From positions 186,001 to 250,000 of the IMG/VR virus record IMGVR_UViG_3300044633_000899: a DNA stretch of 64,000 bases, one strand, 5' to 3'. The notes under the pieces are model-generated. The model searched no databases and had not been told where the DNA came from. It was given only the letters and a program-made list of their open reading frames with translations. Positions 21,347 through 64,000 of the stretch are shown one piece after another. The position numbers and the translations under genes were made by a program. Each line of letters starts with the position of its first letter. The stretch's first letter is position 1.

Positions 21347-24300
21347 ATGGCACAACAGAATATTAATCAATATGCTTATCAAAAATCTAGATTAAACCTA
21401 GAATATGATAGTATGGATATGTCATTAACTTCAGATGAAAGAGATTATAGTGAAGAAGTTGTTTTCTCGCCTTTTCTTATCGCACAAACATATGGTAAAA
21501 AATTACCAATTAATATTGATATTGATAATTTTTTAACAACACAACCTTTAAATCTTACATATAAAAATTATAACCAAAATAATATTTTTGTATCACAAAA
21601 TTATTACAACCCAAACAATGAGGTTTTAAATTGTTTAACCGCCGATACTGTTTGTGATATTGGTTTAACAGGTATTGATAATGGTTTAGTCAATAAAATG
21701 ACAGGTGAAACGTTAAATTTTACTGAGGGTATATTTGAGGATTCAGTTAAGTTTGATAGATTACATTATGACAGACGATTTAAAATGATTCAAGTCACAG
21801 GATATACTGGAATGTATGAACAATTTTCAGGTGTAACTGGTCAAACATTATACGAGGTTGTTAGTAAAAATGATCCAACTATTGGTAGATACCACGAATT
21901 ATATGGTGGCTTTTACCAAGGATTTTATAAATTATTTGGGTATGATTATGAGATATTACCTGAAAGGGTAACAAAAGGTTGGACCATTGAAATGGTTTTA
22001 AAACCTAGGTTGGAAAACGAATATCAACCAAATTCGGGTGAAACAACATTGAATATGTTATACCCCCAAAATAAAAATATGTTTTTTTACTTGGGTACTA
22101 GAGCAGAAAATAAATTTTATCATTATGCTGATGGTTCACCAAAATGTTTTACTGGTTACACAAGAACAACAACACCATTAGCAAATTGTGTTCAAACTTG
22201 CGCTTGTTGTGATAGAAACATAACAAATAGTAGATGTGTTTATTTATATCCACCAAGATCAAAAGATAACCAACACGACCCCCATTTAAACTATGGTTGT
22301 AACACTTGTAACGGTGATAATGAAAAAAAATTAACTTGTGGTTGTGGATGTGGTGAATCACCTTGTGACACTTGTGGTTGGGAATGTCAAACACATAATT
22401 GTCCTATAATTATTGAACCAACACCGACACCAACACCCGTACCGACCTCAACACCGACTTGTGAGAACACAACACCCGTTTGTACACCAAGTTGTACCAC
22501 TTGTGAAACGTGTACCGATTGTGTTGGTTGTAACACAAATGGTTTTACATCAATTGAGGACACTTGTGAGAAAGATCCATTATTTGATTTAATGTCAAAT
22601 AATATTGCGTTTAAATTATGTGGTGACCCAAAGAACCCATCAATTGGTGTTAAAGTTTTACGTTTTACTGGTGGTTGTGAAACAACTGGGACTTGTACAT
22701 CAGGACAAACATATTTAACCGGTTACACAATTGATGAGTATTGTTCACCACCAATTTATCCAAGATGTCAAAAAGAAAATCCGTCTTGGTTAAATTTGGA
22801 ACATTGGTTTCAAGTGGACGTTACTTGGTCACGTTATACCGATTTTGATTATTGCGACTTAAAATACTTTGGTGGTTTAAGCGATATTACAACAATCACC
22901 CCGTTGGATTCATTAGCAAATAACACCGTTAATTTAATACAACCACCATTGACACATATAAATGAGTTTGGTGAGACAATTGAGATTGTTAATTTAAATC
23001 AAAAATGGTTAGAAGAAAAAAAATATAGATTAGGTAGATTAAAAATTTATGTTAATGGTAAACCGATTTACACCTTAGAAAATTTTGAGGAAGTAATACC
23101 AAGAGCGTTAAACACAGATAAAGAAAAACAATTAGGTGTACCATTTAACATTTCTTGGGGTGGTGGAACACAGGGACTTCACGAGAATTTAACATTTTCA
23201 TCTTGTTCTGGATTAACAAGTGGTTACACACAAGATCCAGAATTGTTTCCAACATCAACATTAAGTGGGACAACATTCTCAGGGTTGACAACAAATATCT
23301 TATTGGAAAAAGAATTTGGTGGAACATTTGAAGGTGCAATATCACAATTTAGAATGTATGTTGAACCATTAAGTGGGGATGAGGTTAAACATAATTTTAA
23401 TATTTTAAAAAATAAATTTGGGATGTTTGATCCAGATTGTCCAGATTGTGGTGATGATTTCTGTGAGGTAGATGATTTCACTTTTGAGATAGTTACAACA
23501 ACAACCACACAACTTCCAACGCCAACACCTAGTGTTACTCCAACTGTTACACCAACTGTTACACCAACACCAACGCCGTCAATGCCAATGTTTGAATTAG
23601 ACCTTACAATTGACGTGACAATAACATCAGGTAGTGTTATTGCTAATGTTGTCGTAACAAATAATACACCAGTAATTCGTGATACAACCGTTAGTTTTGT
23701 GAAGAACTTAGTGTTTGAAGATGATAGGATTGTACCTATTAATATTACAGTATTAATACCACAAGGACAAACATCAATAACGAAACAAATCATTATTGAT
23801 GAAGATTATGATAAATTAACAGAAGATACAAATATTGATATACCAGTAATTGATGTCCACGGTATTGATAATGAACAAATTGTTATTACTGAGACTAGAC
23901 AAATACATTATGAGATACCTGTTAAACCTGGTAAGGTAACCCCAACCCCAACACCGACTAATACACCAACCCCAACACCAACAAGTACACCGACAAGTAC
24001 ACCAATACCGACAAACACACCAACACCAACAAGCACATCTGTTGTTGTGTTACCAACTGTTTATTATGGTAAATATTTAAAACAAAATTTTGATGTTGAT
24101 GATTTAAATTTGTTGGGTACGATTGAAACAAACGAGATTGTGAATAATTATTTAATGTACGCGGCAGTTAACGGTTATTGTTATATGTTAATACCAAATA
24201 CAATGCAACAACCAACAATATTTAGAAATAGTAATGATGGTTGTAGTGGATTTATTATACCGTTCGTAAAAGTTGATGAAATAACAATCATTGATTCTCA

Positions 24301-24379
24301 CGGACAAAATATTATATATTATGTATATAGATCTTTTGTATCAACAAAAGCAAATGTTGATGTATGGATCTGTGATTGA
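21347..24379 (+). CDS. 1010-aa Cys-rich, Pro/Thr-tract virion protein with LamG/concanavalin-like segments
   Basis: WTIEMVLKP, LKIYVNG and FEGAISQFRMY (LamG-like), CxxC clusters and three (PT)n tracts. Confidence 0.6.
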   Translation: MAQQNINQYAYQKSRLNLEYDSMDMSLTSDERDYSEEVVFSPFLIAQTYGKKLPINIDIDNFLTTQPLNLTYKNYNQNNIFVSQNYYNPNNEVLNCLTADTVCDIGLTGIDNGLVNKMTGETLNFTEGIFEDSVKFDRLHYDRRFKMIQVTGYTGMYEQFSGVTGQTLYEVVSKNDPTIGRYHELYGGFYQGFYKLFGYDYEILPERVTKGWTIEMVLKPRLENEYQPNSGETTLNMLYPQNKNMFFYLGTRAENKFYHYADGSPKCFTGYTRTTTPLANCVQTCACCDRNITNSRCVYLYPPRSKDNQHDPHLNYGCNTCNGDNEKKLTCGCGCGESPCDTCGWECQTHNCPIIIEPTPTPTPVPTSTPTCENTTPVCTPSCTTCETCTDCVGCNTNGFTSIEDTCEKDPLFDLMSNNIAFKLCGDPKNPSIGVKVLRFTGGCETTGTCTSGQTYLTGYTIDEYCSPPIYPRCQKENPSWLNLEHWFQVDVTWSRYTDFDYCDLKYFGGLSDITTITPLDSLANNTVNLIQPPLTHINEFGETIEIVNLNQKWLEEKKYRLGRLKIYVNGKPIYTLENFEEVIPRALNTDKEKQLGVPFNISWGGGTQGLHENLTFSSCSGLTSGYTQDPELFPTSTLSGTTFSGLTTNILLEKEFGGTFEGAISQFRMYVEPLSGDEVKHNFNILKNKFGMFDPDCPDCGDDFCEVDDFTFEIVTTTTTQLPTPTPSVTPTVTPTVTPTPTPSMPMFELDLTIDVTITSGSVIANVVVTNNTPVIRDTTVSFVKNLVFEDDRIVPINITVLIPQGQTSITKQIIIDEDYDKLTEDTNIDIPVIDVHGIDNEQIVITETRQIHYEIPVKPGKVTPTPTPTNTPTPTPTSTPTSTPIPTNTPTPTSTSVVVLPTVYYGKYLKQNFDVDDLNLLGTIETNEIVNNYLMYAAVNGYCYMLIPNTMQQPTIFRNSNDGCSGFIIPFVKVDEITIIDSHGQNIIYYVYRSFVSTKANVDVWICD

Positions 24380-34583: not shown

Positions 34584-35372
34584 ATGAGTCAATTAATAAC
34601 AATAAATAGTGTATCATATGATGGTGAATTGGCAACAATTTTATTTAAACCAGACAATTCAAATGATGTTATTAATTTTGGTGTTGTTACATTACCGTTT
34701 GTATTTAATTCGGGTTTATTAACACCCCCAAGGGATGTTTATGGTAGTTATACAATATTGGTTGATGGTTCAGATTGTTCAAAAATTATGAATGTACCTA
34801 GACCAACACCCACACCAACACCAACGGTAACACCCACTCGGACTGTTACCCCAACACCTACGACAACACCGACACCAACACCAACAAACGATCCGTGTCC
34901 AACAAAGACACCGACACCAACACCGACCTCAACACCACAACCAACAAGAACCCCCACAAGGACACCAACACCGACACCAACGTCAAGTCCGTGTAAAACA
35001 CCTACGCCAACACCGACACCAACAACAAGTTTGTTGCCGTCATCGTCTGGTATTTATTTTGGTAAATTTAGTGGTTCAACAATAACAAGTGGTAATGTGT
35101 CAACGTTTACTTTTGTTTTAACAAACAACCCGACAAATTCATATGTTACATTTCAAACTGGAAGTGCGTATGGATATATTTTAATACCAATATCATTATC
35201 ACAACCAACAGGATTTAGAGATAGTGATGCTGGTTGTAGTGGATTTAATATACCAATAAATAATATTGGGACAATAATTATAATAGACGGAAATGGTTTC
35301 CCAATAACATATAATATATATAGAACATTCTATCCATTCTTTGGTGATACAGATTGTTGGTTATGTAATTAA
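34584..35372 (+). CDS. Pro/Thr-tract (mucin-like) virion protein
   Basis: About 75-aa (PT)n tract with interspersed Cys. The C-terminal domain is homologous to the end of 21347. Confidence 0.75.
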
Positions 35373-39517: not shown

Positions 39518-40692
39518 AATATCCTTTAGCAAATGGTGTATGGTCTAACGCTGCAAATTGGAATGGTGGAACTTTACCAGTTCCTGGTGACGATGTAAGG
39601 GCTAATGGTTTTACCGTTACAATTGACGTTGATATAGATGTTTTACAAATTGCCACCGTCGCATTAGCACCCGCTGTTGCTGGTGGTACATTTACTGTGA
39701 GTACTAATCGTAATATAACAGCCAACATTAATGCTGGAAGTAGTAGTTGTTTAACATCAGCGAGTGGTGTCATTGTAAATGTTATTGGTAACATAAATGC
39801 TGGTAGTGGGAATGTAATACATGGTATAAATTTTACTAATGCGGGTTCTATATTAAATGTAACAGGAAACGTTACCGCTGGTAGTTCTGTAAATAATCAG
39901 TCTGGAATTAATTCATCTGGTACTGTTAACTTTATTGGAAACGCTACAGGTTCTGCTGTTGGTTTTGGTTCTTCAGCAATTAATATAGGTACAAGTGGAA
40001 TATTAAATTTTACAGGAACCGCTACAGGTGGAAATGCTGGTAATACATCTTACGCTATTTTAACTGCTGGTAATGGTACATATAATGGAACTATAACTGG
40101 TGGTGGTGCTGGAGGTTCAGTTGGTGTTAGAATAACTGCTGGTGTTCATACTATTAATTCTGATTGTTTTGGTGGTACTGGTGCCCTTTCACATGGTGTT
40201 CAAATGTTAACATCTACAGCAACATTCAACGGTAATATATTTGCTGGTAGTGTTACTAATTCACAAGCCGTTTTAATATCAACATCTACCGCAACATTTA
40301 ATGGTAATATATTTGGTTCAACATCATCATTATCTTTAGGTCTTAGTGTGTCTGATACCGCATCAAATGTTGTTATTTCAACGATGACACTCAGTACAAA
40401 TGGTGGTTTACCAGTTAATGGATTCGTTAAGTTTAAAAATACAGCACCTACAATTACGGTAAGAAAAGCAAACAATACAAACCAAACACTTGTTGACCCC
40501 TCAACAACTGATATACCAGTAATTGGTGATGTTAGAGATGGTATAGTTTACGCAAGCGGCTCATTAACAGGAACATTAAAAGTTCCACCAGTCAATGCTG
40601 TAAGTGTGGGTGTTCCAAATGATAATACGGTAGGTACTGCGGTTATTGATATAAATGATATGGGAGCATTACTGGCTAGTTATGTTGCGTGA
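39508..40692 (+). CDS. Gly/Thr/Asn-rich beta-helix adhesin-like protein, copy 2
   Basis: Termini nearly identical to 38189, with a divergent and longer centre. Confidence 0.7.
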   Translation: MALKYPLANGVWSNAANWNGGTLPVPGDDVRANGFTVTIDVDIDVLQIATVALAPAVAGGTFTVSTNRNITANINAGSSSCLTSASGVIVNVIGNINAGSGNVIHGINFTNAGSILNVTGNVTAGSSVNNQSGINSSGTVNFIGNATGSAVGFGSSAINIGTSGILNFTGTATGGNAGNTSYAILTAGNGTYNGTITGGGAGGSVGVRITAGVHTINSDCFGGTGALSHGVQMLTSTATFNGNIFAGSVTNSQAVLISTSTATFNGNIFGSTSSLSLGLSVSDTASNVVISTMTLSTNGGLPVNGFVKFKNTAPTITVRKANNTNQTLVDPSTTDIPVIGDVRDGIVYASGSLTGTLKVPPVNAVSVGVPNDNTVGTAVIDINDMGALLASYVA

Positions 40693-41198
40693 TGATGATA
40701 ACGATAACAGGATCAACAGGAATAGGACCATACCAAGTTCAAGTTTGTGATATAACAAACACAACTTGTATTATTGTAACTGGTTCAACAACAATACCCC
40801 CCAGTTTTACATTTGATGTTCCATCACCATTAGATGGTGTGTCGTCATTGTTAGTTAAAATTATTGATTCAAATGGGTGTGAGGTGTTCCAAGTTTATTC
40901 TTGTCCCCCAACACCGACACCAACACCAAGTGTTACCCCCACACCTACCCCAACACCTACAAACTTATGTTATTGTATCACAGTTCAAAACAGTGGTGTT
41001 ACAGATGGTTATTTTGATTATGTTGATTGTAATAGTAATCAACAAACAAATGTTTTAGTTCAAGGTGGTGTAACGTATTATACTTGTGGTGTCAATCCTA
41101 CAAATGAAATAAATGTTATAACAACTGTTGGTGGTTTATGTGATTCAAACCAATCTTGTCCGACACCAACTTGTACACCAACACCATCAACAACTTAA
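40689..41198 (+). CDS. Small Cys- and Pro/Thr-rich virion protein
   Basis: [20 protein letters not shown] and CPTPTCTPTPSTT tracts. Confidence 0.7.
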   Translation: MMMITITGSTGIGPYQVQVCDITNTTCIIVTGSTTIPPSFTFDVPSPLDGVSSLLVKIIDSNGCEVFQVYSCPPTPTPTPSVTPTPTPTPTNLCYCITVQNSGVTDGYFDYVDCNSNQQTNVLVQGGVTYYTCGVNPTNEINVITTVGGLCDSNQSCPTPTCTPTPSTT

Positions 41199-41241: not shown

Positions 41242-42486
41242 ATGTCAACAATATTTGTTCAGATAGCATCGTATAGAGATCCCCAACTTAAAATAACAGT
41301 TGAGGATATGATTAATCAATCAAAACACCCAGAAAATTTACGTATTGGTATTTGTAATCAGTATTCACCAGATGATGAATTTAACATTGACCAATATCAA
41401 GATGACCCAAGGTTTAGAATTGATAATGTTCTTTATACCGAATCAAAAGGTGTTTGTTGGGCTCGTCATATGGTACAACAAAGGTATAGTGGTGAAACGT
41501 ATACGTTACAGATTGATTCACATATGCGTTTTGAGAAAAACTGGGATGAGGAATTAATTAATATGATTGTTGGTTTACAAAACAAAGGTGTTAAAAAACC
41601 ATTGTTAACTGGTTATGTATCATCTTTTGATCCAGATAATGACCCAAAGGGTAGAGTTGTGGATCCGTGGAGAATGGTATTTGATAGATTCACACCAGAG
41701 GGTTGTGTTTTCTTTTTACCAGAAGTTATTCCAAACTGGAAGGAATTAAAAGAACCAATACCCGCAAGATTTTATTCGGCACATTTTTGTTTTACATTAG
41801 GTAAATTTTCAGAGGAAGTTCAACACGATTCGGAATACTACTTTCACGGTGAGGAGATTTCAATTGCGGTTAGAGCGTTTACTTATGGGTATGATTTATA
41901 CCATCCGCATAAAGTTTTGGTTTGGCATGAATATCTCAGATCTAACAGAGTAAAATGTTGGGATGATGATAAGGTGTGGTACAAAAAGAATGACGCGTCA
42001 CACAAAAGAAATAGAGAATTATTTGGTATTGATGGTGAAAAGTTTTCTGGTGATACGTCACAATATTTTGGTACAGAAAGAACTTTAAGTGATTATGAAA
42101 AATACGCGGGAATTTTATTTGAGAAACGTGCGGTACAACAATATACATTAGACAAACAATATCCACCAAATCCATATAATTTCAATAATGATGATGAATG
42201 GAAAAATTCTTTTTTAAGAATATTTAAACATTGTATTGATTTATCTTTTGATCTTGTTAAAGAAACCGATTATGATTTTTGGGTTGTTGCGTTTCATAAT
42301 GAAAAAGACGAAACATTATTTAGACAAGACGCACAAACGGATGAGATTAATAGAATGATGAAAGATAAAGATGGGTATTGTAAAATTTGGAGAGAATTTA
42401 ATGCAACAGAAAAACCTAAATATTGGGTGGTTTGGCCACATAGTACATCAAAAGGTTGGTGCGATAGAATAACAGGAAATTTATGA
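41242..42486 (+). CDS. GT60 (Pfam GlcNAc) polypeptide alpha-GlcNAc transferase-like, with a C-terminal extension
   Basis: TIFVQIASYRD, GVCWARH, YTLQIDSHMRF..NWD, FHGEEI and GYDLYHP..LVWHEY match the Gnt1/OGNT family. Confidence 0.88.
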   Translation: MSTIFVQIASYRDPQLKITVEDMINQSKHPENLRIGICNQYSPDDEFNIDQYQDDPRFRIDNVLYTESKGVCWARHMVQQRYSGETYTLQIDSHMRFEKNWDEELINMIVGLQNKGVKKPLLTGYVSSFDPDNDPKGRVVDPWRMVFDRFTPEGCVFFLPEVIPNWKELKEPIPARFYSAHFCFTLGKFSEEVQHDSEYYFHGEEISIAVRAFTYGYDLYHPHKVLVWHEYLRSNRVKCWDDDKVWYKKNDASHKRNRELFGIDGEKFSGDTSQYFGTERTLSDYEKYAGILFEKRAVQQYTLDKQYPPNPYNFNNDDEWKNSFLRIFKHCIDLSFDLVKETDYDFWVVAFHNEKDETLFRQDAQTDEINRMMKDKDGYCKIWREFNATEKPKYWVVWPHSTSKGWCDRITGNL

Positions 42487-44141
42487 TCACATTAGTAACA
42501 GGTTTATGGGATATAGGTAGAGGTGAGTTATCAGAAGGTTGGTCTCGTTCATACGAACATTACCTTGATAAGTTTTCACAATTATTAAAAGTGGAAAATG
42601 ATATGATAATCTTTGGTGATCACAAATTAAAAGAATTTGTTTTCCAACACAGAGAAGAATATAACACACAATTTATTTTAAGAGAATTATCTTGGTTTAA
42701 AAATAATGAATTTTACGACCCCATCCAAAGAATAAGAACAAACCCTTCTTGGTATAATCAGGTTGGTTGGTTAAAGGATTCCACTCAAGCAAAACTTGAG
42801 ATGTATAACCCGTTGGTTATGTCAAAAATGTTTTTATTAAATGACGCAAAACTTTTGGATAAATTTAATTCTGATCGTTTATTTTGGGTTGACGCGGGAA
42901 TAACAAACACCGTTAACCCAGGATATTTTACACACGATAAAGTTTTAGATAAAATATCATTTGATAAGTTTACATTTGTGTGTTTCCCATATGATGCGAA
43001 TACGGAAGTTCACGGGTTTGATTATAAAAAAATGTGTGAGTTATCTGGTACTAAAACCAAAGTTGTTGCTCGTGGTGGATTTTTTGGTGGTGACAAGGAT
43101 TCAATATCACAGATGAATGTTTTGTATTATAATTTATTGGTTGAAACATTGAACTCTGGGTATATGGGTACTGAAGAATCGTTATTTACAATTCTTTTAT
43201 ATCAACACCCTTCACTTATTGATTATTGTGAAATTGAATCAAATGGGTTGGTGTTTAAATTTTTTGAGGATTTAAAGAATGATAAGGTTGTTTTGAAAAA
43301 TGAAGGGAAGAAGATTGTTCCAAACCATAATGGGGATGTTGGTTTATATGTAATTACATTTAATTCACCAAAACAATTTGAGACATTAATAAAATCAATG
43401 TTGGATTATGATCCGAACTTTATTCATAAAACAAAAAAGTTTTTGCTTGATAACTCAACAGATTTAACTACAACACCAAGATATAGAGAATTATGTGATG
43501 AATATGATTTTATTCATATTAAAAAGAATAACATCGGAATAACGGGTGGAAGAGTTTTTATTGCGGAACATTTTAACGACCAAGAAAACCTATCACATTA
43601 TTATTTTTTTGAGGATGATATGGAATTTTATAGTGGGAAAGATGTTACTTGTAAAAATGGATTTGTGAGAAATATTGATAATTTATTTGATAAGTCAATT
43701 GAGATTATTAAAAAAGAAAACTTTGATTATTTGAAGTTAAACTTCACCGAGTTCTATGGATCACACAACAAACAGTGGTCTTGGTATAATGTAAGTCAGG
43801 AATTTAGGGAAAAACATTGGCCAAATAATCCGAAACTTCCAAAACAAGGTCTTGATCCATATTCTCCAAATCTTGAATTTAAACATATCAAATCACATAA
43901 AGGACTGGCGTATGTTTCTGGTGAAATCTATTTATCCAATTGGCCAATAGTAATGACAAAAGAAGGAAACTATAATTGTTATATTAAAACAAAATTCCAA
44001 CACCCATATGAACAGGTCCTAATGTCACATTGTTATCAAGAAACAATCAAAGGAAATATTAAACCAGGATTACTTCTTGCAACACCAACGGAACACCACC
44101 GATTTGATTTCTATGAAGGTTCATTAAGAAAAGAATATTAA
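42483..44141 (+). CDS. WlaTC/HtrL(YibB)-family glycosyltransferase fused to a GT-A-like domain
   Basis: ITLVTGLWDIGR, FWVDAG, GGFFGG and GTEESLFT in domain 1. VITFNSP, LDNST and YFFEDDM in domain 2. Confidence 0.8.
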   Translation: MITLVTGLWDIGRGELSEGWSRSYEHYLDKFSQLLKVENDMIIFGDHKLKEFVFQHREEYNTQFILRELSWFKNNEFYDPIQRIRTNPSWYNQVGWLKDSTQAKLEMYNPLVMSKMFLLNDAKLLDKFNSDRLFWVDAGITNTVNPGYFTHDKVLDKISFDKFTFVCFPYDANTEVHGFDYKKMCELSGTKTKVVARGGFFGGDKDSISQMNVLYYNLLVETLNSGYMGTEESLFTILLYQHPSLIDYCEIESNGLVFKFFEDLKNDKVVLKNEGKKIVPNHNGDVGLYVITFNSPKQFETLIKSMLDYDPNFIHKTKKFLLDNSTDLTTTPRYRELCDEYDFIHIKKNNIGITGGRVFIAEHFNDQENLSHYYFFEDDMEFYSGKDVTCKNGFVRNIDNLFDKSIEIIKKENFDYLKLNFTEFYGSHNKQWSWYNVSQEFREKHWPNNPKLPKQGLDPYSPNLEFKHIKSHKGLAYVSGEIYLSNWPIVMTKEGNYNCYIKTKFQHPYEQVLMSHCYQETIKGNIKPGLLLATPTEHHRFDFYEGSLRKEY

Positions 44142-44196: not shown

Positions 44197-44661
44197 ATGG
44201 AGTGGTTCATAAAAAAAGGTGCGACATTACCCTTGTTAAAATTGTCGGTTGTGAAAGACGGTCGCAGCGACTATAATAATTTTATGGATTTTATTGAGGA
44301 ATCGTCAATCTTTTTTTCAATGGTTGACCTTGAAACTGGTATTCCAAAAATTATGACGAAACCAGCGGGGTTTGTTAAGAAAGATCTTATGGATCCAAAC
44401 GCACCAACAGAATATTATATTTATTACCAATTCACATCACAAGATACAAAAAAAACTGGAAGATATGAAGGTCAGTTTTTATTTAGAAATGAAGAAGGTA
44501 CATTAATTCTACCAATTAGAGATCGGTTATTTATTAACATACAAGAAAGTTTTATCGCCGATGATTTACCATATGAGAGTTGTTACGTATCAGAATTTCC
44601 TTGTTGTGTTAAAACACCAATCATTCCAATAACAACAACCACAACAACAATAATCTTTTAA
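44197..44661 (+). CDS. BppU-like baseplate/fibre adaptor Ig-fold protein
   Basis: FIKKGATLPLL..V and YQFTSQDT...G.YEGQF pattern; Thr-tract at the C-terminus. Confidence 0.55.
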   Translation: MEWFIKKGATLPLLKLSVVKDGRSDYNNFMDFIEESSIFFSMVDLETGIPKIMTKPAGFVKKDLMDPNAPTEYYIYYQFTSQDTKKTGRYEGQFLFRNEEGTLILPIRDRLFINIQESFIADDLPYESCYVSEFPCCVKTPIIPITTTTTTIIF

Positions 44662-53200: not shown

Positions 53201-53204
53201 ATTG

Positions 53205-53211
53205 ATAAATA
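53205..53211 (-). promoter_or_regulatory. TATTTAT putative late-promoter motif (representative copy)
   Basis: Also found at 3188, 18278, 21309, 21329, 24930, 34563, 44176, 52731, 53676, 54162, 55721, 56205, 56676, 60103, 61903 and 61946, each shortly upstream of a start codon on the coding strand. Confidence 0.7.
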
Positions 53212-53221
53212 TTCTATTTTT

Positions 53222-53671: not shown

Positions 53672-53707
53672 ATTGATAAATATTCTAATTTTTTTAAATT
53701 GTAGATA

Positions 53708-54157
53708 TCATTCAATTTTTCCAATTACTTCCGTGCTGTTTGCGTAGATTCTGACTCCCCTTAAATTGTAGACCTCACCCAACCATATCTCTATAATTTT
53801 CTGTCTTTCAGAAAATTTAAGACCAAATTTATCTTCCAATACTGACCAAATTTCATCAGAATTGATATAAACAGAATCATTTTTTCTATCGTAAACCATA
53901 AAGTTATGACCTTTTCTATAACGATACAATGTCCAATTTTCATCTTCCTCACTCTGAACCGATTCCAAATCATTAAATAAATTTAAGAAATCCATCGGTT
54001 CTTTGACATCAAAGATTTCAAATGTTTTATCCAAAGATCCAACAATCTTTGTTACAGATTTAAAACCAACTTTTTTTATTAAACCCAACAATTTTTCCTT
54101 TAAAGAAACGTTTTCTTTGATTAGTTTGTATTGACTTTCGGATATAATAATTTTCAT
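53708..54157 (-). CDS. Array paralog 4
   Basis: Same family; WLGEVYNLRGV. Confidence 0.85.
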   Translation of the reverse strand: MKIIISESQYKLIKENVSLKEKLLGLIKKVGFKSVTKIVGSLDKTFEIFDVKEPMDFLNLFNDLESVQSEEDENWTLYRYRKGHNFMVYDRKNDSVYINSDEIWSVLEDKFGLKFSERQKIIEIWLGEVYNLRGVRIYANSTEVIGKIE

Positions 54158-54178
54158 ATTGATAAATATTCTAATTTT

Positions 54179-54266
54179 TTAAATTGTAGACCTCATCCAG
54201 TAAAGAAATCCATTGGCATAAATACAAATTTAGGTGTGACTCCCCTTAAATTGTAGACCTCATCCA
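54179..54266. repeat. Perfect 21-nt direct repeat flanking a 46-nt unique segment
   Basis: TTAAATTGTAGACCTCATCCA at 54179-54199 and 54246-54266. Degenerate pairs occur at 53694/53761, 55754/55822, 53222/53281 and 56222/56275. Confidence 0.9.
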
Positions 54267-55716
54267 ACCACCTCTCTGTAAGTTTTTGTATTTCAGAGTA
54301 GTTAAGACCAAATTTATCTTCCAAAACTGACCAAATTTCATCATAATTGATATAAACATAATCCTTTTTTCTATCGTAAATCATTATATTATGATCTTTT
54401 TTATAACGAAATAATATCCAATTTTCTTTTTCTTCAGATTGGGTACCTTTCAAATCATTAAATAGATGTAAGAAATCCATCGGTTCTTTAATGTCAAAAA
54501 TTTTAAATAAATTATCCAAGGATCCAACAATTTTTGTTACAGATTCAAAACCAACTTTTTTGATTAAACCCAATAATTTTTCTTTTAAAGATATTGATTC
54601 ATTTAATGGTTTTTTATTATCCTCTTTTTTTGTTTTTGAGATATATAAATCATTAACAAATTCCCAATTAACACAATTCCAAAAGTTTTTAATATATTCG
54701 TCACGTTTATTTTGATATTTTAAATAATACGCGTGTTCCCAGACATCCAACCCCAACAATGGATAACCACCATCTTTAATGATATTCATTAATGGATTAT
54801 CTTGATTTGGTGTGGACATAATTTTAAGTCTATTTGTTTTTGTTAAGACAAGCCAAACCCAACCAGAACCAAATCTATCTTTTGCAATTTGGTTAAACTC
54901 ATCTTTCATCTTTTTTATATTACCATATTGTTTGGTAATTTTATCAAAAATTTCACCCTTTGGTATTTGTTTCTTTGGTGACAACATCTTCCAAAACAAA
55001 GCGTGGTTAAAAGCACCCCCAGCGTTGTTTCGTACTTTCTCATCAAATTTACTAATTGATTTTATAATATCTTCTAATTCAAGATCTTTATGTTTTTTTT
55101 CAGATAAAGCATCATTTAATTTTTTAACATAACCTTTATAATGTTTGTTGTAATGAATATCCATCGTTTTTGGATCAACAAATTGTTTTAATGCGGAATA
55201 TGAATATGGTAATTTTTCAATACCAATTTTTTTCATTTCCATAATAAACTCTTCTTTGATGTTTTCTTTTTCCGTTAAGAGAATTTGTTCTGAGATAAGA
55301 TTAATTTTATTAACTATTTTTTCTGAACACTCAAAAACCAATTGATTATAATCTGGGTATTCTTTTTCAAACATTTTTATTAATCTACCAGCAAAAGCGT
55401 TTGCCTCATCTTCATTTTGACCACCAATATCTGGTCCTCGTTCTCTACCTAAAGAAAAACGTTGGTGTGCGTGAACCCACTCGTGAGCCAAGGTTCTCAT
55501 AATGTCACGATTTAATCTATTTTTTGATAAAATTTTTAATGTACCGTCCATACTCTGACTACCAGTTGACATTTGACCCATTTTATCACCCAAAAACAAA
55601 ATTGTTAAATCTTGATTAACAGGATAATGATTACCTAAAAACTTGATAAAATCATTGTACATTTTTTTATCGTTAGCATCAAGTCCAGAATCATTATGTT
55701 TAATTGTGATTTTCAT
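54193..55716 (-). CDS. Three-part fusion: HExxH metallopeptidase-like domain, Fe/Mn superoxide dismutase, and array domain (paralog 3)
   Basis: RTLAHEWVH; LPYSYSAL, HYNKHY, FNHALFW, FGSGWVWL and DVWEHAYY; then SLKEKLLGLIKK...WLDEVYNL. Confidence 0.9.
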   Translation of the reverse strand: MKITIKHNDSGLDANDKKMYNDFIKFLGNHYPVNQDLTILFLGDKMGQMSTGSQSMDGTLKILSKNRLNRDIMRTLAHEWVHAHQRFSLGRERGPDIGGQNEDEANAFAGRLIKMFEKEYPDYNQLVFECSEKIVNKINLISEQILLTEKENIKEEFIMEMKKIGIEKLPYSYSALKQFVDPKTMDIHYNKHYKGYVKKLNDALSEKKHKDLELEDIIKSISKFDEKVRNNAGGAFNHALFWKMLSPKKQIPKGEIFDKITKQYGNIKKMKDEFNQIAKDRFGSGWVWLVLTKTNRLKIMSTPNQDNPLMNIIKDGGYPLLGLDVWEHAYYLKYQNKRDEYIKNFWNCVNWEFVNDLYISKTKKEDNKKPLNESISLKEKLLGLIKKVGFESVTKIVGSLDNLFKIFDIKEPMDFLHLFNDLKGTQSEEKENWILFRYKKDHNIMIYDRKKDYVYINYDEIWSVLEDKFGLNYSEIQKLTERWLDEVYNLRGVTPKFVFMPMDFFTG

Positions 55717-55753
55717 AATTATAAATATCTAATGATTGTAAAATATAGTTTTA

Positions 55754-56200
55754 TTAAATCATAGATATCATCCAATCCCAATTCTGAAAGTTCTCAAAAA
55801 CCCAAGTCGGTCTGGTTCTCTTTAAATTGTAGGTATCATCCAACCAATCCTTAATAAGGTTACTTATATCATAATAGTTTGTTAAATGTTTCTGTTCTAA
55901 AACTGACCAAATGTCACCATAATTGATATAAACAGCATCACTTCTTCTGTCGTGAATCATAATGTTATAACCTTTTTTATAACGATATAATGTCCAAGAT
56001 GGTCTTTCCTCACTCTGAATTACATCCAATTCATTAAATAAATTTAAGAAATCCATCGGTTCTTTGATATCCAAAATTTCAAGTGTTTTATCCAAGGATC
56101 CAACAATTTTTGTTGTGGACTTAAAACCAATTTTTTTAACTAAACCTAGTAATTTTTCTTTAATCGATTTATATTGATTTTCGGTTATAATAATTTTCAT
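55754..56200 (-). CDS. Array paralog 2
   Basis: Same family; WLDDTYNL. Confidence 0.85.
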   Translation of the reverse strand: MKIIITENQYKSIKEKLLGLVKKIGFKSTTKIVGSLDKTLEILDIKEPMDFLNLFNELDVIQSEERPSWTLYRYKKGYNIMIHDRRSDAVYINYGDIWSVLEQKHLTNYYDISNLIKDWLDDTYNLKRTRPTWVFENFQNWDWMISMI

Positions 56201-56221
56201 ATTGATAAATATTTCACTTTT

Positions 56222-56671
56222 TTAAATTGTGGTGTTGTGTATACCAACAATATGGTTATACGTTGTGATTCCCTTTAAATCATAGACCTCATCCAACCAC
56301 GTTTCTACAAGGGTTGTAATGTCACCAAAGTTAATATCAAAATTATCTTCCAAAATTGTCCATATTTCGTCATAATTAATGAAAACATATTTAATTTTTC
56401 TATCGTAAATCATAAAATTATGACCTTTTTTATATCTATACAATACCCAATTTGGTTCTTCTTCACTCTGAACAACATCCAAATCATTAAATAAGTTCAA
56501 GAAATCCATTGGTTCTTTAATATCAAAGATATCAAAAGTTTTATCCAAAGACCCAACAACTCTTATCGTTGATTCAAATCCAACCTTTTTGATTAAACTC
56601 AATAATTTTTCTTTTAAAGAAACGTTTTCTTTGATTAGTTTGTATTGACTTTCGGTTATTATTATTCGCAT
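56222..56671 (-). CDS. Array paralog 1
   Basis: Same family; WLDEVYDL. Confidence 0.85.
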   Translation of the reverse strand: MRIIITESQYKLIKENVSLKEKLLSLIKKVGFESTIRVVGSLDKTFDIFDIKEPMDFLNLFNDLDVVQSEEEPNWVLYRYKKGHNFMIYDRKIKYVFINYDEIWTILEDNFDINFGDITTLVETWLDEVYDLKGITTYNHIVGIHNTTI

Positions 56672-60064: not shown

Positions 60065-60124
60065 TATTTTTTATTAAAAAATCGTTTTTTTTTTTTTTGA
60101 TATATTTATAATAAAAAACATATT

Positions 60125-60541
60125 ATGAAAAAAATTTTAAGACTAACAGAAAACGATTTAACCCGTATCGTTAAACGAGTTATTCGTGAACAAGATGGTG
60201 AATCACATAATAAAATATCAGATGAAGATTTTGATTCTTTTTTAGATGTTTTATCACAATATGAATCAGGTGACATTACTTGGGATGACTTTTTAGAAAA
60301 AAGTGAAGCTATTGGTTCAAAATATGTGGTTGGACCAAAACCAAAATCAAACGTTTTTATTGGGTTGTCTAATCAAGTTGAAGAGTTTAATCAAAAGTTG
60401 TCAAACCATTATGATGACCTAATTAGAAATTCTACGTTATTTGGTAATATTTATGATGCTTACGAATCTGGTGAATTAACTAACGATGAAGGGTTCACTC
60501 TATTGAAAATGATCCGTACGGTAGAATATAACGACCGTTAA
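60125..60541 (+). CDS. Hypothetical protein with an MKKILRLTENDLTRIVKRVIRE leader
   Basis: The leader resembles that of the array genes. TATTTAT lies upstream (60103-60109). Confidence 0.65.
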   Translation: MKKILRLTENDLTRIVKRVIREQDGESHNKISDEDFDSFLDVLSQYESGDITWDDFLEKSEAIGSKYVVGPKPKSNVFIGLSNQVEEFNQKLSNHYDDLIRNSTLFGNIYDAYESGELTNDEGFTLLKMIRTVEYNDR

Positions 60542-60656
60542 TGTTTAAAATCGTCCGATAAAGGTGATCCTATTGAAGTAATTAAAGAAGTTTCAGAACG
60601 AAGTGAAAGGGGTTTACAGTAAATTTTTATAAAGTAATCACTAATGTTATCATATT

Positions 60657-61586
60657 TTAAAAATTTAATAGTTTCAATGTATGGTTAACATTGTTCCCAT
60701 TAAGATATGTTGTGTAATATTGTCTTGCGTTTTTTGTTATAAATTTTAAAAATTCTAAATCATCTTTTACATTTAAAAATTTTTTTTCAATTAGTTTAGC
60801 GTGTTTTTCTAAACCTAACCTATCAGTTGATAGTCCATTATGTCTTGGTATGTCGTCTGGTCTATCAACTGATATATAGTGATAATTTGGTATGAGTTTT
60901 GGGTTCAATTCACTTAGATATTCAAACCTTAAAAAAGGTATACCTAAACACATATATTCAATGTCTCTATAACATAATTCCCCAACTCCAGCTACTGATA
61001 GTCCAATTTTATATTTTATAATATCGTCAAAATAATTTGGAACTGGTTGAAACCCTTCAACATATTTTTTATCAAAAAATTGGGTTATTGGTCTTTCACT
61101 TACAGTACCCCTAAAGCACATCTTATCAATATAAGATTTAAATGTTTCTCTTTTTTCATAAAACATTTCATAATCAAAGACATCTTGAGGAAAATAAATC
61201 CAAGGACTATATTTTTCAATACTATCACCAACATGTTGTTTTAGATAATTATAATTAAATTGTGACAATAAAACTTTTTTTAAAAACGGATTATTATGTT
61301 CATTTAAAATTGCTGTAGATAATCTATCTGAAACTGATAAAACATAAAATTCACCAGTATCATCAAATTCAATCACATATTCACATTCGTGTAATACGAA
61401 ATATTTTGAGTTACCTTTTTTTAATTTTATTGGAAACTGATGTGAATTTGCAAATTCAAAAAACCTATTTTCCACAACAACAAAACGTTTTTTTAATTCA
61501 TCTGTTAATTTATCCCAAAATAAATTATAGTTTCTATAGTATCTTGTGTTTTCATTACACGGATTGTGTACGATAATTTTTCTCAT
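60657..61586 (-). CDS. GT-B glycosyltransferase-like (GT90/CgeB-type C-terminus)
   Basis: FRG, KYKIGLSVAGVGELCYRDIEYMCLGIP and LIPNYHYI. Confidence 0.65.
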   Translation of the reverse strand: MRKIIVHNPCNENTRYYRNYNLFWDKLTDELKKRFVVVENRFFEFANSHQFPIKLKKGNSKYFVLHECEYVIEFDDTGEFYVLSVSDRLSTAILNEHNNPFLKKVLLSQFNYNYLKQHVGDSIEKYSPWIYFPQDVFDYEMFYEKRETFKSYIDKMCFRGTVSERPITQFFDKKYVEGFQPVPNYFDDIIKYKIGLSVAGVGELCYRDIEYMCLGIPFLRFEYLSELNPKLIPNYHYISVDRPDDIPRHNGLSTDRLGLEKHAKLIEKKFLNVKDDLEFLKFITKNARQYYTTYLNGNNVNHTLKLLNF

Positions 61587-61701
61587 AATTATATATTATT
61601 ATGAATTTATTTTAAAAAAAAATATAGTGATTTTTAATTATAAAATAAATAATACTTATTATGAAAGTCATTCCATAATAATACGAAAACGTTAAAAATT
61701 T

Positions 61702-61986: not shown

Positions 61987-64000
61987 ATGGCAACTAACAG
62001 TAAAATATTTGTATCACCAGGTGTTTATACTTCAGAAGTGGATTTAAGTTTTGTCGCGCAGAGTGTTGGTGTTACAACACTTGGTATTGCGGGGGAAACT
62101 TTAAAAGGTCCGGCTTTTGAACCAATTTTCATTAAAAACTTTGACGAATTCCAAAATTATTTTGGGGGTACGTCACCGGAAAAATTTGTTAATACACAAA
62201 TTCCGAAATATGAAGCGTCGTACATCGCAAAAGCGTATCTACAACAATCTAATCAATTATTTGTAACTAGAATCCTTGGATTATCTGGTTATGATGCGGG
62301 ACCATCTTGGTCAATTGTAACTAAAGCAAACGTTGATCCAACAACCGTTGATTTTATGTGTGAAAGTGGTCAAACGATTGATTGTGAATTTGTTTGTCAA
62401 GAACCAAGTGGTAACACGTTTAGTTTTGGATTTGTCGGTTGTACAAATTCGTCTGAAACAATTGAATATTCTGAAACTTCATTACCAATTCAAATTGAAA
62501 GTATGTTGACCACACAATATGAAACATTTAATGGGTCTGTATCAACATTGGATGCAAACATTAGAAGTTTGATTAGTGGTGTTATGGCCGAACCATCAAC
62601 ATCAGCAGATACTATTAGTTATTTCGGTTCAATTTGGGGTGACGATTATAGTACTTTATCAACATTGTTTACAAACGAAAATAATGTGTTTAATGTTCCC
62701 TCACCATCAAGTGAGTTAACAGACTACACATCACCATTTAACGATCCTTGGTATTACGCTCAATTTGAAAACATTGGTAATGGTTTATACTCAGGTTTTT
62801 CATTCTTCTTATATGTTGACGAATTATCTGAAATTATACCAGTAACAACAACAACAACAACGTTACCACCAACTCCAACTCCAACACCAGATCCGTGTAA
62901 TCCAACACCAACTACAACAACAACGACAACAACACAACCAGAGGTTATTACTTGTTATTCAGGTAATGTTGTTGGTAAAATTTATTACTATTCAGGTATT
63001 TCTTATACGGAATATGATAATTTAGTTGTTGGAACATTAAGATCTAGAGGTATCGCAACATACGCTGACGGTAATAATCCAGTATTTGAGGTTTCAGCAA
63101 CAACAAATGTTACTTTAAATATGGGTGGTCAGTATAGTCCTGTTCTTAAAGATCCGTATATGCCGTTTGCGATAAATGTAACAAATAACACTGGTACTAA
63201 CTTTGTTTTTGAAGCGTCATTTTCTCAATCCGATTCACAATATATTGCTAAAGTATTTGGTGGTACAAATTTTGGGAAACCAAGAACCTCAACACCATTG
63301 TTTTTAGAAGAGAATTTCCAATCAATATTAAATTACGGATGGAAAAAAGGTTATATTAGAGGTTTAAGTTCTGATTTAATTGCGTTGGATTCGGCTCAAA
63401 GTAACGATTCATCATCAATTGGTTGGTATTTAGATAAATATCAAACACCATCTTCACCTTGGGTTGTTTCTGAATTAAGAGGTAATAAAACATTTAACCT
63501 ATTTAAATTCTATACAATATCTGATGGTAATTCAGCAAACAGCGAGGTTAAAGTTTCATTTATTAATATGTCATTCAATAACAGAACTTTTGATGTTTTA
63601 GTTAGAGATTATTATGATGTTGACGCAAATCCAGTTGTACTTGAGAAATTTACAAACTGTACAATGGATCCGTCACAAAATAATTTTATCGCGAAAAAAA
63701 TCGGTACACTAGATGGTGAATACCAGTTAAATTCAAAATATATAATGGTTGAAATGAATGAGGACGCACCTACAGATGCTTTACCTTGTGGTTTTGATGG
63801 TTATGTGTTTAGAGAATACGCTGACGCTAAATCACCATTCCCAGTTTATAAAACAAAATATGATTTCCCTGGTGAGGTTGTTTATAACCCCCCATTTGGT
63901 TTCTCAAGCGGAAATGACGATGCAATAATTTCTGGTGGTGATAATGTTAGAAAAACATATTTAGGATTTTCTAATAACATCGGATTTGATACTAGTTTCT
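61987..64000 (+). CDS. Contractile tail sheath protein, partial; runs off the right edge
   Basis: Manual translation MATNSKIFVSPGVYTSEVDLSFVAQSVGVTTLGIAGETLKGPAFEP..FDEF...FGG...LFVTRILG. Confidence 0.92.
   Translation, partial: MATNSKIFVSPGVYTSEVDLSFVAQSVGVTTLGIAGETLKGPAFEPIFIKNFDEFQNYFGGTSPEKFVNTQIPKYEASYIAKAYLQQSNQLFVTRILGLSGYDAGPSWSIVTKANVDPTTVDFMCESGQTIDCEFVCQEPSGNTFSFGFVGCTNSSETIEYSETSLPIQIESMLTTQYETFNGSVSTLDANIRSLISGVMAEPSTSADTISYFGSIWGDDYSTLSTLFTNENNVFNVPSPSSELTDYTSPFNDPWYYAQFENIGNGLYSGFSFFLYVDELSEIIPVTTTTTTLPPTPTPTPDPCNPTPTTTTTTTTQPEVITCYSGNVVGKIYYYSGISYTEYDNLVVGTLRSRGIATYADGNNPVFEVSATTNVTLNMGGQYSPVLKDPYMPFAINVTNNTGTNFVFEASFSQSDSQYIAKVFGGTNFGKPRTSTPLFLEENFQSILNYGWKKGYIRGLSSDLIALDSAQSNDSSSIGWYLDKYQTPSSPWVVSELRGNKTFNLFKFYTISDGNSANSEVKVSFINMSFNNRTFDVLVRDYYDVDANPVVLEKFTNCTMDPSQNNFIAKKIGTLDGEYQLNSKYIMVEMNEDAPTDALPCGFDGYVFREYADAKSPFPVYKTKYDFPGEVVYNPPFGFSSGNDDAIISGGDNVRKTYLGFSNNIGFDTSF

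What the first reader, a model, noticed from the sequence alone, without database searches (positions are those of the whole stretch)
62839..62940. Mucin-like insertion inside the contractile tail sheath protein
Seen: the in-frame sequence PVTTTTTTLPPTPTPTPDPCNPTPTTTTTTTTQP lies within a Cys-containing insertion of the sheath. Known: sheath proteins are high-copy and their inserted domains face outward. Inference: O-glycosylation here would coat the whole tail with glycan, which is the strongest structural hint for the GT60 system.
Basis: partly seen in the sequence, partly recalled or inferred. Interest (0 to 1): 0.6.

Follow-up and report, generated by a model that had tools for sequence, protein, structure and literature searches.

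The report
Threonine-proline loop on phage tail sheath
The tail sheath of this uncultured 296-kb jumbo phage carries a conserved, cysteine-pinned threonine/proline-rich surface loop, one of about sixteen such tracts in the genome. It is a plausible but unproven target for the phage's own eukaryote-type (GT60) sugar-adding enzyme, which would coat the tail in glycan.

Summary
Window 62839-62940 encodes residues 285-318 of a 1107-aa contractile tail sheath, and 28 of those 34 residues are Thr or Pro (chance about 5e-22).

A confident domain model places the tract as a disordered loop between two long strands. Those strands belong to a PAS-like module nested inside the sheath's outer domain.

The tract is kept in 49 of 52 non-redundant relatives. 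It is 35-44 aa long, with about 19 Ser/Thr, about 8 Pro and almost no charge. Its sequence flips between poly-Thr and (Thr-Pro)n. A central (D/N)PC cysteine and the C-terminal cysteine covary with cysteines in the domain body, which suggests disulfide pinning.

It is one of 16 such tracts in 10 ORFs of the genome.

A genuine GT60 gene (PF11397, 230 bits) lies 20 kb upstream. Only 4 of 50,697 cultured phage records encode a relative, all of them jumbo phages. The three I scanned have many in-frame Thr/Pro runs, while nine GT60-negative large phages have none. One of the GT60 carriers, XacN1, has stained virion glycoproteins.

No direct evidence shows that the sheath is glycosylated. One relative keeps GT60 but lacks the sheath tract, and XacN1's sheath has no such run.

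The parts
61987..64000 (+). 5' two-thirds of the tail sheath gene. The full ORF is 1107 aa and ends at G000:C1:251310, which is 1310 bases beyond the window end.
   Evidence: PF17482 1e-8, PF04984 7e-6, phrog_23 5e-55, PDB sheaths 8e-35.
62278..63411 (+). Outer inserted domain of the sheath (residues 98-475). It is a sheath outer-domain scaffold with a nested PAS-like alpha/beta module at about residues 140-337.
   Evidence: AF2 domain model with pLDDT 86.8 and pTM 0.77. The best VIA matches are sheath outer domains: 9ezm_A Z 7.4, 8jaj_a Z 5.6, 9gb1_1 Z 5.4, T4 gp18PR Z 4.0. PAS domains match the nested part at Z 3-5.
62836..62952 (+). Thr/Pro-rich tract (residues 284-322; the finding covers 285-318). 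It is modelled as a low-confidence loop between strands 267-283 and 323-339.
   Evidence: Conserved in 49 of 52 non-redundant relatives at 35-44 aa, with a mean of 19 Ser/Thr, 8 Pro and 1.2 charged residues.
62896..62898 (+). Cys304 codon, the centre of the tract, in the conserved (D/N)PC motif.
   Evidence: Present in all 50 aligned relatives that have a tract and absent from the 3 that lack it. Co-occurs with Cys137.
62953..62955 (+). Cys323 codon at the C-terminal end of the tract.
   Evidence: Covaries perfectly with Cys152: 47 sequences have both, 6 have neither, none is mixed.
62440..62442 (+). Cys152 codon, the inferred disulfide partner of Cys323.
41242..42486 (+). GT60-family glycosyltransferase gene (414 aa).
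   Evidence: PF11397 5.5e-68, 230 bits against a cut-off of 21. phrog_24687 1e-158. Invariant D92-S93-H94 in 39 homologues. 6690 metagenomic relatives.
42483..44141 (+). HtrL/YibB-like ORF (552 aa) immediately downstream of GT60. It is a candidate second glycosyltransferase.
   Evidence: PF09612 1.9e-20 and TIGR02192 4.8e-21, which is below its equivalog cut-off. The function is inferred.
40689..41198 (+). 169-aa ORF with a cysteine-bracketed (Thr-Pro)n tract, immediately upstream of GT60.
   Evidence: The same arrangement occurs in 3 of 6 GT60 loci examined.
34584..35372 (+). 262-aa ORF with an 83-residue Thr/Pro tract interrupted by cysteines.
21347..24379 (+). 1010-aa cysteine-rich ORF with three Thr/Pro tracts.
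   Evidence: Weak match to a virion structural protein family, phrog_8510 3e-4.
44197..44661 (+). 154-aa ORF with a C-terminal Thr run.

Best explanation
Shown: the tract is a 35-44 residue Thr/Pro-rich, uncharged, disordered loop. It joins the last two strands of a PAS-like module nested inside the outer domain of the tail sheath, in a widespread clade of uncultured jumbo phages. Its composition, its length and a central (D/N)PC motif are conserved, while its sequence is free to change.

Inferred from cysteine covariation: the middle of the loop (C304) and its end (C323) are tied to the domain body by disulfides (with C137 and C152). This would give two short Thr-rich sub-loops displayed on every sheath subunit.

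Inferred function: the hydroxyl-rich loops, together with the about 15 similar tracts in other ORFs (one with an adhesin-type SprB repeat, one weakly like a virion structural protein), are acceptor sites for cytoplasmic O-glycosylation. The phage's GT60 enzyme, a homologue of the UDP-GlcNAc:polypeptide alpha-GlcNAc transferases that start mucin-type glycans on Thr-rich domains in Dictyostelium and Trypanosoma cruzi, would start the glycan. The phage's other glycosyltransferases (HtrL-like, at least 5 GT2) may extend it. The assembled tail would then carry a glycan coat.
For: - Sheath identity.
- Loop placement and outer-domain fold.
- Conservation of length and composition across relatives of 40-92% identity in this domain (60-95% over the whole sheath).
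- Depletion of Lys and Arg (0.7% together), although both are single-base neighbours of the commonest Thr codon.
- Cysteine covariation with no mixed cases for three pairs.
- GT60 assignment with the metal-binding D-x-H motif intact.
- GT60 enzymes act on Ser/Thr-rich mucin domains: PMC8724618.
- A Thr/Pro-tract ORF lies directly upstream of GT60 in 3 of 6 loci.
- GT60 is present in 5 of 5 large contigs of relatives.
- Only 4 of 50,697 cultured phage records encode GT60. XacN1, RAS14 and Xoo-sp13 have 16, 10 and 26 raw hits for 8 or more consecutive Thr/Pro codons. The hits checked for XacN1 and RAS14 are in frame in large ORFs. Nine GT60-negative large phages (2.86 Mb) have none.
- XacN1 virions contain at least 2 Schiff-stained glycoproteins, which the authors attribute to ORF328/ORF334. 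ORF334 is the GT60 homologue.
- Xoo-sp13 annotators named one such ORF 'mucin-16-like'.
- At least 5 GT2 genes offer capacity to extend a glycan.
Against: - There is no direct chemical evidence for any glycan on this or any related sheath.
- GT60 is retained in a relative (G005) whose sheath lacks the tract, and the XacN1 sheath has no Thr/Pro run. The sheath tract is therefore at most one of several substrates.
- The association test has few independent lineages, effectively two, and I chose the controls myself. Part of the Xoo-sp13 signal is noise: its reversed-pattern control gave 9 hits, and the 5 overlapping matches at one site lie on the strand opposite the annotated gene.
- Thr/Pro linkers work without glycans in many proteins (own knowledge).
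- GT60 lies about 6 kb from a DNA polymerase gene in both G000 and XacN1, so another substrate is conceivable.
- No solved GT60 structure was found to check acceptor-site geometry.
Confidence: 0.45

Rival explanations
1. The tract is an unglycosylated Pro/Thr spacer. It would be a stiff, extended, protease-resistant, uncharged loop that only spaces or hydrates the surface of the outer sheath domain, or lets it flex during contraction. GT60 would serve some other purpose.
For: Pro/Thr linkers are common interdomain spacers (own knowledge). The tract is modelled as disordered. Length is conserved more tightly than sequence. Three relatives do without it. GT60 persists without the sheath tract.
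Against: It does not connect two domains: it is a hairpin loop inside one module. Ser/Thr content stays very high, at a mean of 19 of about 40 residues, whether or not Pro is present, and in many relatives the tract is nearly pure poly-Thr. Genome-wide co-occurrence of such runs with GT60, and their absence from nine other large phages, is not explained.
Confidence: 0.3
2. The tract is glycosylated, but a transferase other than GT60 starts the glycan (one of the at least 5 GT2 enzymes, the HtrL-like protein, or a host enzyme). GT60 would act on a different target such as other virion proteins, host envelope or DNA.
For: Many other glycosyltransferase genes are present. GT60 is not tied to the sheath tract in G005 or XacN1. 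GT60 lies near a DNA polymerase gene in two lineages.
Against: GT60 is the only family here with a documented Thr-rich polypeptide acceptor. The genome's ThyA-like gene scores as an ordinary thymidylate synthase (TIGR03284, 269 bits), so nothing points to hydroxymethylated bases that a DNA glycosyltransferase would need.
Confidence: 0.12
3. The tract is neutral low-complexity DNA, an ACA/CCA-rich repeat that grew by replication slippage in a tolerant surface loop, with no function of its own.
For: The DNA is a simple codon repeat. The sequence turns over quickly even between sheaths that are 94-95% identical overall. The tract is dispensable in three relatives, and two others replaced part of it with poly-Gly.
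Against: Length stays within 35-44 aa in 49 relatives of 40-92% identity in this domain. The central (D/N)PC is invariant. Charged residues are nearly excluded. The flanking cysteines covary with partners in the domain body. Cysteine-bracketed tracts of the same style recur in about 10 ORFs.
Confidence: 0.06
4. The tract is an adhesive bristle. The Thr/Pro loops, glycosylated or not, would bind host or environmental polysaccharide, much as Ig-like decoration domains do on other phages, and raise the encounter rate.
For: The tract is exposed on a high-copy surface. Another Thr/Pro-tract ORF carries SprB adhesin repeats.
Against: No binding fold or motif was identified. This reading is compatible with, rather than an alternative to, the glycosylation reading.
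Confidence: 0.07

Closest known systems
T4 gp18-type contractile tail sheath with nested outer domains (solved sheaths of T4, phiKZ gp29, P1, phiCD508 and a Halogeometricum borinquense tailed virus)
   Same: The conserved N-terminal segment and the C-terminal about 320 residues match at up to 8e-35. Residues 98-475 superpose on the protruding domains of solved sheaths (Z 7.4-4.0).
   Different: The insert is about 690 residues, far larger than in those sheaths. It contains a PAS-like module, several covarying cysteine pairs and the Thr/Pro loop. I found none of these features in the solved sheaths or in the closest cultured relative by sheath similarity, Microcystis phage Mel-JY01.
Eukaryotic GT60 polypeptide alpha-GlcNAc transferases and their mucin-type acceptors (Dictyostelium, Trypanosoma cruzi; PMC8724618)
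   Same: The enzyme family is the same (PF11397, 230 bits) and the D-x-H motif is kept. The candidate acceptors are Thr runs and Thr-Pro repeats, as in the protist substrates.
   Different: Here the enzyme is phage-encoded and presumably cytosolic in a bacterium. The acceptors are short loops of 12-83 residues bracketed by cysteines in virion proteins, not long secretory mucin domains. The activity, the donor sugar and the linkage are untested.
Mycobacteriophage virion glycosylation (Freeman et al. 2023, as summarised in PMC12619734)
   Same: Phage-encoded glycosyltransferases decorate high-copy virion proteins with glycans.
   Different: In that system the glycans sit on the C-termini of capsid and tail-tube subunits of siphoviruses, and this has been shown experimentally. 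Here the candidate site is an internal loop of the contractile sheath, the enzyme family is GT60, and nothing has been shown experimentally.
Xanthomonas jumbo phage XacN1 and its relatives Xoo-sp13 and Stenotrophomonas phages RAS14/CM1
   Same: They encode the only GT60 homologues among cultured phages (42-48% identity). The three scanned carry many Thr/Pro runs in large ORFs. XacN1 virions stain for glycoprotein.
   Different: They belong to a different lineage. The XacN1 sheath gene (ORF367) has no Thr/Pro run; its runs sit in giant ORFs next to baseplate genes. GT60 is followed there by a carbamoyltransferase rather than an HtrL-like gene.
Pro/Thr-box linkers of bacterial glycoside hydrolases (own knowledge)
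   Same: The (Pro-Thr)n composition is the same, and some of these linkers are O-glycosylated in the native host.
   Different: Those linkers connect two folded domains of secreted enzymes. This tract is a hairpin loop within one module of a cytoplasmically assembled virion protein.

Membership tests
Contractile tail sheath (Phage_sheath_1 / gp18-like) | C-terminal sheath domain (PF17482) | tested here: met
   E 1.1e-8, 35.5 bits against a cut-off of 26.9, residues 1002-1098.
Contractile tail sheath (Phage_sheath_1 / gp18-like) | Subtilisin-like core domain (PF04984) and similarity to solved sheaths | tested here: met
   PF04984 scores 26.4 bits, below Pfam's 31.4 cut-off. However, phrog_23 matches at 5e-55 and PDB sheaths match at 8e-35 to 3e-31 over residues about 790-1106.
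Contractile tail sheath (Phage_sheath_1 / gp18-like) | Extra domains inserted between the N-terminal segment and the core, protruding outward | tested here: met
   The domain model of residues 98-475 superposes best on the protruding domains of solved sheaths (Z 7.4, 5.6, 5.4; T4 gp18PR Z 4.0). The Z values are modest, and the outward orientation rests on that homology.
Contractile tail sheath (Phage_sheath_1 / gp18-like) | Adjacent tail tube gene | not tested
   The ORFs downstream of the sheath (C1:251458-253225) lie outside the window and were not scanned.
CAZy GT60 / Pfam PF11397 polypeptide alpha-GlcNAc transferase | Profile match above the curated threshold over the catalytic domain | tested here: met
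   230.4 bits against a cut-off of 21, covering profile positions 1-45 and 100-350 of 352.
CAZy GT60 / Pfam PF11397 polypeptide alpha-GlcNAc transferase | GT-A metal-binding D-x-H/D-x-D motif | tested here: met
   D92-S93-H94 is invariant in 39 homologues. That this is the catalytic motif of the family is my own knowledge and was not checked against a structure; none was found in the PDB.
CAZy GT60 / Pfam PF11397 polypeptide alpha-GlcNAc transferase | Transfers GlcNAc from UDP-GlcNAc to Thr/Ser (or Hyp) of a polypeptide | not testable with these tools
   This needs an enzyme assay. No prolyl hydroxylase-type gene (PF13640) was found, which favours Thr/Ser over Hyp as the acceptor if the enzyme acts on protein.
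Mucin-like (Pro/Thr/Ser) domain | Strong Pro/Thr/Ser bias and predicted disorder | tested here: met
   28 of 34 residues are Thr or Pro, and pLDDT is 50-56 inside an otherwise confident model.
Mucin-like (Pro/Thr/Ser) domain | Long tandem-repeat array of hundreds of residues | tested here: not met
   The tract is 35-44 residues, split by a conserved cysteine, and is not a long repeat array. 'Mucin-like' describes its composition only.
Mucin-like (Pro/Thr/Ser) domain | Dense O-glycosylation | not testable with these tools
   This needs mass spectrometry or glycan staining.
Phage virion glycosylation system (mycobacteriophage type) | Phage-encoded glycosyltransferases together with Ser/Thr-rich acceptor segments on high-copy virion proteins | tested here: inconclusive
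   Both components are present. The enzyme family and the site type (internal loop rather than C-terminal tail) differ, and no glycan has been shown.

The most novel reading that the evidence does not exclude
A clade of jumbo phages runs a mucin-type O-GlcNAc glycosylation system of the eukaryotic GT60 kind inside bacteria. The system would decorate disulfide-pinned Thr/Pro loops on the contractile sheath and on other virion proteins, sheathing the whole tail in glycan. This would be the first glycosylated tail sheath and the first functional GT60 outside eukaryotes. It would also bear on where the protist enzymes came from.
Probability: 0.35. Interest if true: 0.75.

Novelty: new variant of a known kind. 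Interest (0 to 1): 0.55.

Why it matters
Glycosylation of phage virions has so far been shown for very few phages, and on capsid and tail-tube termini. A glycan coat on a contractile sheath, built on dedicated Thr/Pro loops by a GT60 enzyme, would be a new way for phages to shield or functionalise their most abundant tail protein. Possible effects include protease and defence evasion, colloidal stability and adhesion.

It would give a function to a glycosyltransferase family with thousands of unnamed metagenomic members (6690 relatives). It would also extend GT60 biochemistry from protists to bacterial viruses.

The inferred disulfide pinning also suggests that the outer sheath domain matures oxidatively after release from the cell.

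The hypothesis can be tested directly by heterologous co-expression, and genetically in cultured phages (XacN1, Xoo-sp13, RAS14).

Tried and rejected
- **Complex prediction.** A prediction of GT60 with the sheath hairpin plus tract gave no verdict (score 0.00, controls not run). It counts neither for nor against binding.
- **Full-length sheath fold.** The full-length model was poor (mean pLDDT 48) and its fold search only recovered the C-terminal sheath domain. I replaced it with a domain model.
- **Foldseek on the domain model.** It gave nothing below E 0.1 against the PDB.
- **PDB searches with GT60.** The single sequence and a 39-sequence profile found no solved relative.
- **The 309-aa ORF next to the sheath as a dedicated sheath glycosyltransferase.** I rejected this as a conserved partner. 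It sits in a 1.6-kb insertion private to this genome. Its glycosyltransferase nature rests only on Atlas neighbours and was not confirmed with PF13524, Pfam, PHROGs or NCBIfam.
- **Hydroxyproline route.** No PF13640 prolyl hydroxylase gene was found.
- **Viral sulfhydryl oxidase to form the disulfides.** No Erv1/Alr gene was found.
- **DNA hypermodification as the GT60 role.** The only ThyA-like gene scores as an ordinary thymidylate synthase. This route is not supported, but it is not excluded either.
- **Assignment to the published 'moraphage' lineage.** Class II LysRS and glutamine synthetase are absent, so I do not claim membership.
- **Mel-JY01 sheath as a comparator for the insert.** It shows no similarity to residues 98-475.
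- I did not use read laying or the look-up of sequencing runs.
Full report
**Observation**

Window 62839-62940 (+) lies in frame in an ORF that starts at 61987 and runs off the window end. The window is G000:C1:186001-250000 of a 296,330-bp virus record with 30.3% G+C, rated complete by CheckV. In the full record the ORF is 1107 aa long.

The ORF is a contractile tail sheath. PF17482 matches at 1e-8, PF04984 at 7e-6 and phrog_23 at 5e-55. Solved sheaths of T4-like phages match residues about 790-1106 at 8e-35 to 3e-31.

The tract is residues 285-318, and 28 of its 34 residues are Thr or Pro. The proteome frequency of Thr plus Pro is 10.7%, so the probability of this composition is about 5e-22.

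**Where the tract sits**

The conserved sheath parts are the N-terminal about 100 residues and the C-terminal about 320. About 690 residues are inserted between them.

A full-length model was poor. A model of residues 98-475, built on 53 non-redundant homologues, is confident (pLDDT 86.8, pTM 0.77). Its best structural matches are the protruding domains of solved sheaths: 9ezm_A at Z 7.4, phage P1 at Z 5.6, phiCD508 at Z 5.4, plus T4 gp18PR and phiKZ gp29PR at about Z 4. A nested part, at about residues 140-337, resembles PAS-like alpha/beta modules at Z 3-5.

The tract is the only low-confidence stretch in this model (pLDDT 50-56). It connects two long strands, 267-283 and 323-339. It is therefore a loop at the most deeply nested level of insertion. 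By homology with solved sheaths, that places it on the outside of the tail. This last step is an inference, and the Z values are modest.

**Conservation**

More than 600 IMG/VR contigs encode relatives of this sheath, and the best 80 are 60-95% identical to it. Of 52 non-redundant homologues, 49 keep the tract. It is 35-44 residues long, with a mean of 19 Ser/Thr, 8 Pro and 1.2 charged residues. A (D/N)PC motif is invariant in the middle.

The sequence flips freely between poly-Thr and (Thr-Pro)n, even between sheaths that are 94-95% identical overall. Lys and Arg together make up only 0.7% of tract residues. Composition and length are therefore constrained, while sequence is not.

The three most divergent relatives lack the tract. 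Two others replace part of it with poly-Gly.

**Cysteines**

Cysteine columns covary with no mixed cases:
- C152 with C323: 47 sequences have both, 6 have neither.
- Positions 379 with 462: 19 have both, 34 have neither.
- Positions 118 with 248: 7 have both.
- C304 co-occurs with C137 in every sequence that has a tract, and both are lost together with the tract.

I infer disulfides that pin the middle and the end of the tract to the domain body. No viral sulfhydryl oxidase gene was found, so any oxidation would presumably happen after release from the cell.

**Genome context**

The tract is not unique. The genome has 16 Thr/Pro tracts in 10 ORFs. Most cluster at C1 7-13 kb and 207-251 kb, and most are bracketed by cysteines. 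One of these ORFs carries SprB adhesin repeats, and one weakly resembles a virion structural protein.

A genuine GT60 gene lies at window 41242-42486. PF11397 scores 230 bits against a cut-off of 21, phrog_24687 matches at 1e-158, and the D-S-H motif is invariant. Its neighbours are:
- directly upstream, a 169-aa cysteine-bracketed Thr/Pro ORF; the same pairing occurs in 3 of 6 GT60 loci examined;
- directly downstream, an HtrL/YibB-like ORF.

The genome also has at least five GT2 genes.

**Is GT60 linked to the tracts?**

Within the clade the test cannot discriminate. GT60 is present in 5 of 5 large contigs of relatives. One of these (G005) has a sheath without the tract, and that contig still has another Thr/Pro-tract ORF.

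Across phages the result is more telling. Only 4 of 50,697 cultured phage records encode a GT60 relative: XacN1, Xoo-sp13, CM1 and RAS14, all jumbo phages, at 42-48% identity.

I scanned for 8 or more consecutive Thr/Pro codons:

| Genome | GT60 | Raw hits |
|---|---|---|
| G000 | yes | 20 |
| XacN1 | yes | 16 |
| RAS14 | yes | 10 |
| Xoo-sp13 | yes | 26 |
| Nine other large phages, 2.86 Mb in total | no | 0 in each |

The nine GT60-negative phages include XacN1's nearest relatives Atu_ph07, SCTP-2 and RaK2. The XacN1 and RAS14 hits that I checked are in frame in large ORFs.

Taken at face value, four of four against none of nine gives a Fisher probability of about 0.0014 (my arithmetic). Three caveats apply:
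- The GT60 carriers represent only about two independent lineages.
- I chose the controls myself.
- Xoo-sp13 is noisy. Its reversed-pattern control gave 9 hits, and the 5 overlapping matches at one site lie on the strand opposite the annotated gene.

Published data add weight. GT60 enzymes start mucin-type O-glycans on Ser/Thr-rich domains in Dictyostelium and T. cruzi (PMC8724618). XacN1 virions contain at least two Schiff-stained glycoproteins, which the authors attribute to ORF328/ORF334; ORF334 is the GT60 homologue (PMC5852040). One Xoo-sp13 run-bearing ORF was annotated 'mucin-16-like protein'.

**Evidence against, and limits**

- No chemistry has been done on this sheath or any related one.
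- The XacN1 sheath gene has no Thr/Pro run, and G005 keeps GT60 without the sheath tract. The sheath loop can therefore be only one substrate among several.
- GT60 lies about 6 kb from a DNA polymerase gene both here and in XacN1. The only ThyA-like gene, however, is an ordinary thymidylate synthase, so a DNA-modification role has no positive support.
- The complex prediction gave no verdict.
- The 309-aa ORF beside the sheath, which the Atlas places near glycosyltransferase clusters, lies in a 1.6-kb insertion private to this genome. It is not part of the conserved system.

**Verdict**

The best explanation is a conserved, probably disulfide-pinned Thr/Pro display loop on the outer sheath surface that serves as an O-glycosylation site for the phage's GT60-led glycosylation toolkit (confidence about 0.45). 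The main rival is an unglycosylated spacer loop (about 0.3).

Literature searches for GT60 in phages, and for O-glycosylation of tail sheaths, found nothing relevant. If the explanation is true, this would be a new variant of phage virion glycosylation.

Noticed in passing
window 60067-61701: This 1.6-kb insertion is private to this genome. Relatives of 93-100% DNA identity, and all other sheath loci, join 60066 directly to 61702. It carries a 138-aa ORF (60125-60541 +) and a 309-aa ORF (60657-61586 -). The Atlas neighbours of the 309-aa ORF include Glyco_trans_1_2, GT90 and RXYLT1_C clusters, but no HMM library confirmed this.
   Followed up: partly
window 62278-63411 (sheath residues 98-475): Three cysteine pairs covary perfectly across 53 homologues: 152/323, 379/462 and 118/248. 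This implies disulfide bonds in the outer domain of a protein assembled in the cytoplasm. No Erv1/Alr oxidase gene was found.
   Followed up: partly
window 4380-4685, 8859-9260, 13743-14912; also G000:C1:134034-136228: At least five GT2-family (PF00535) glycosyltransferase ORFs are present, two of them with two GT2 domains. This is an unusually large glycosyltransferase complement.
   Followed up: no
G000:C1:7013-8695 (outside the window; L148:514-2193): A 560-aa Thr/Pro-tract ORF carries SprB repeats (PF13573, 9e-11), a repeat typical of Bacteroidota gliding adhesins. This hints at the host phylum and at an adhesin role.
   Followed up: no
window 52754-56671 (- strand): Five paralogous 148/149-aa ORFs lie in two tandem groups flanking a 507-aa ORF. 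Their function is unknown.
   Followed up: no
window 48277-51216 and 41242-42486: GT60 lies about 6 kb from a DNA polymerase gene (phrog_262, 5e-52). It is similarly close to the DNA polymerase and RNase H genes in XacN1 and RAS14. This may be remnant synteny or a hint of another role.
   Followed up: partly
L077 and L079 (sheath relatives), tract region: In these two relatives the second half of the tract begins with a run of 6-7 glycines, and both C323 and C152 are lost. The loop therefore tolerates a different low-complexity filler.
   Followed up: no
G000 whole record: No class II lysyl-tRNA synthetase or glutamine synthetase gene was found, so the phage is probably not one of the published 'moraphages', despite its similar size and aquatic (metagenomic) source. 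The closest cultured sheath, Microcystis phage Mel-JY01, shares only the sheath core.
   Followed up: partly
XacN1 AP018399.1 203370-213311 (ORF325) and Xoo-sp13 MN047793.1 108649-111639: The Thr/Pro runs in XacN1's 3313-aa ORF325, which lies next to the baseplate wedge genes, are also bracketed by cysteines. The Xoo-sp13 run-bearing ORF is annotated 'mucin-16-like protein'.
   Followed up: partly
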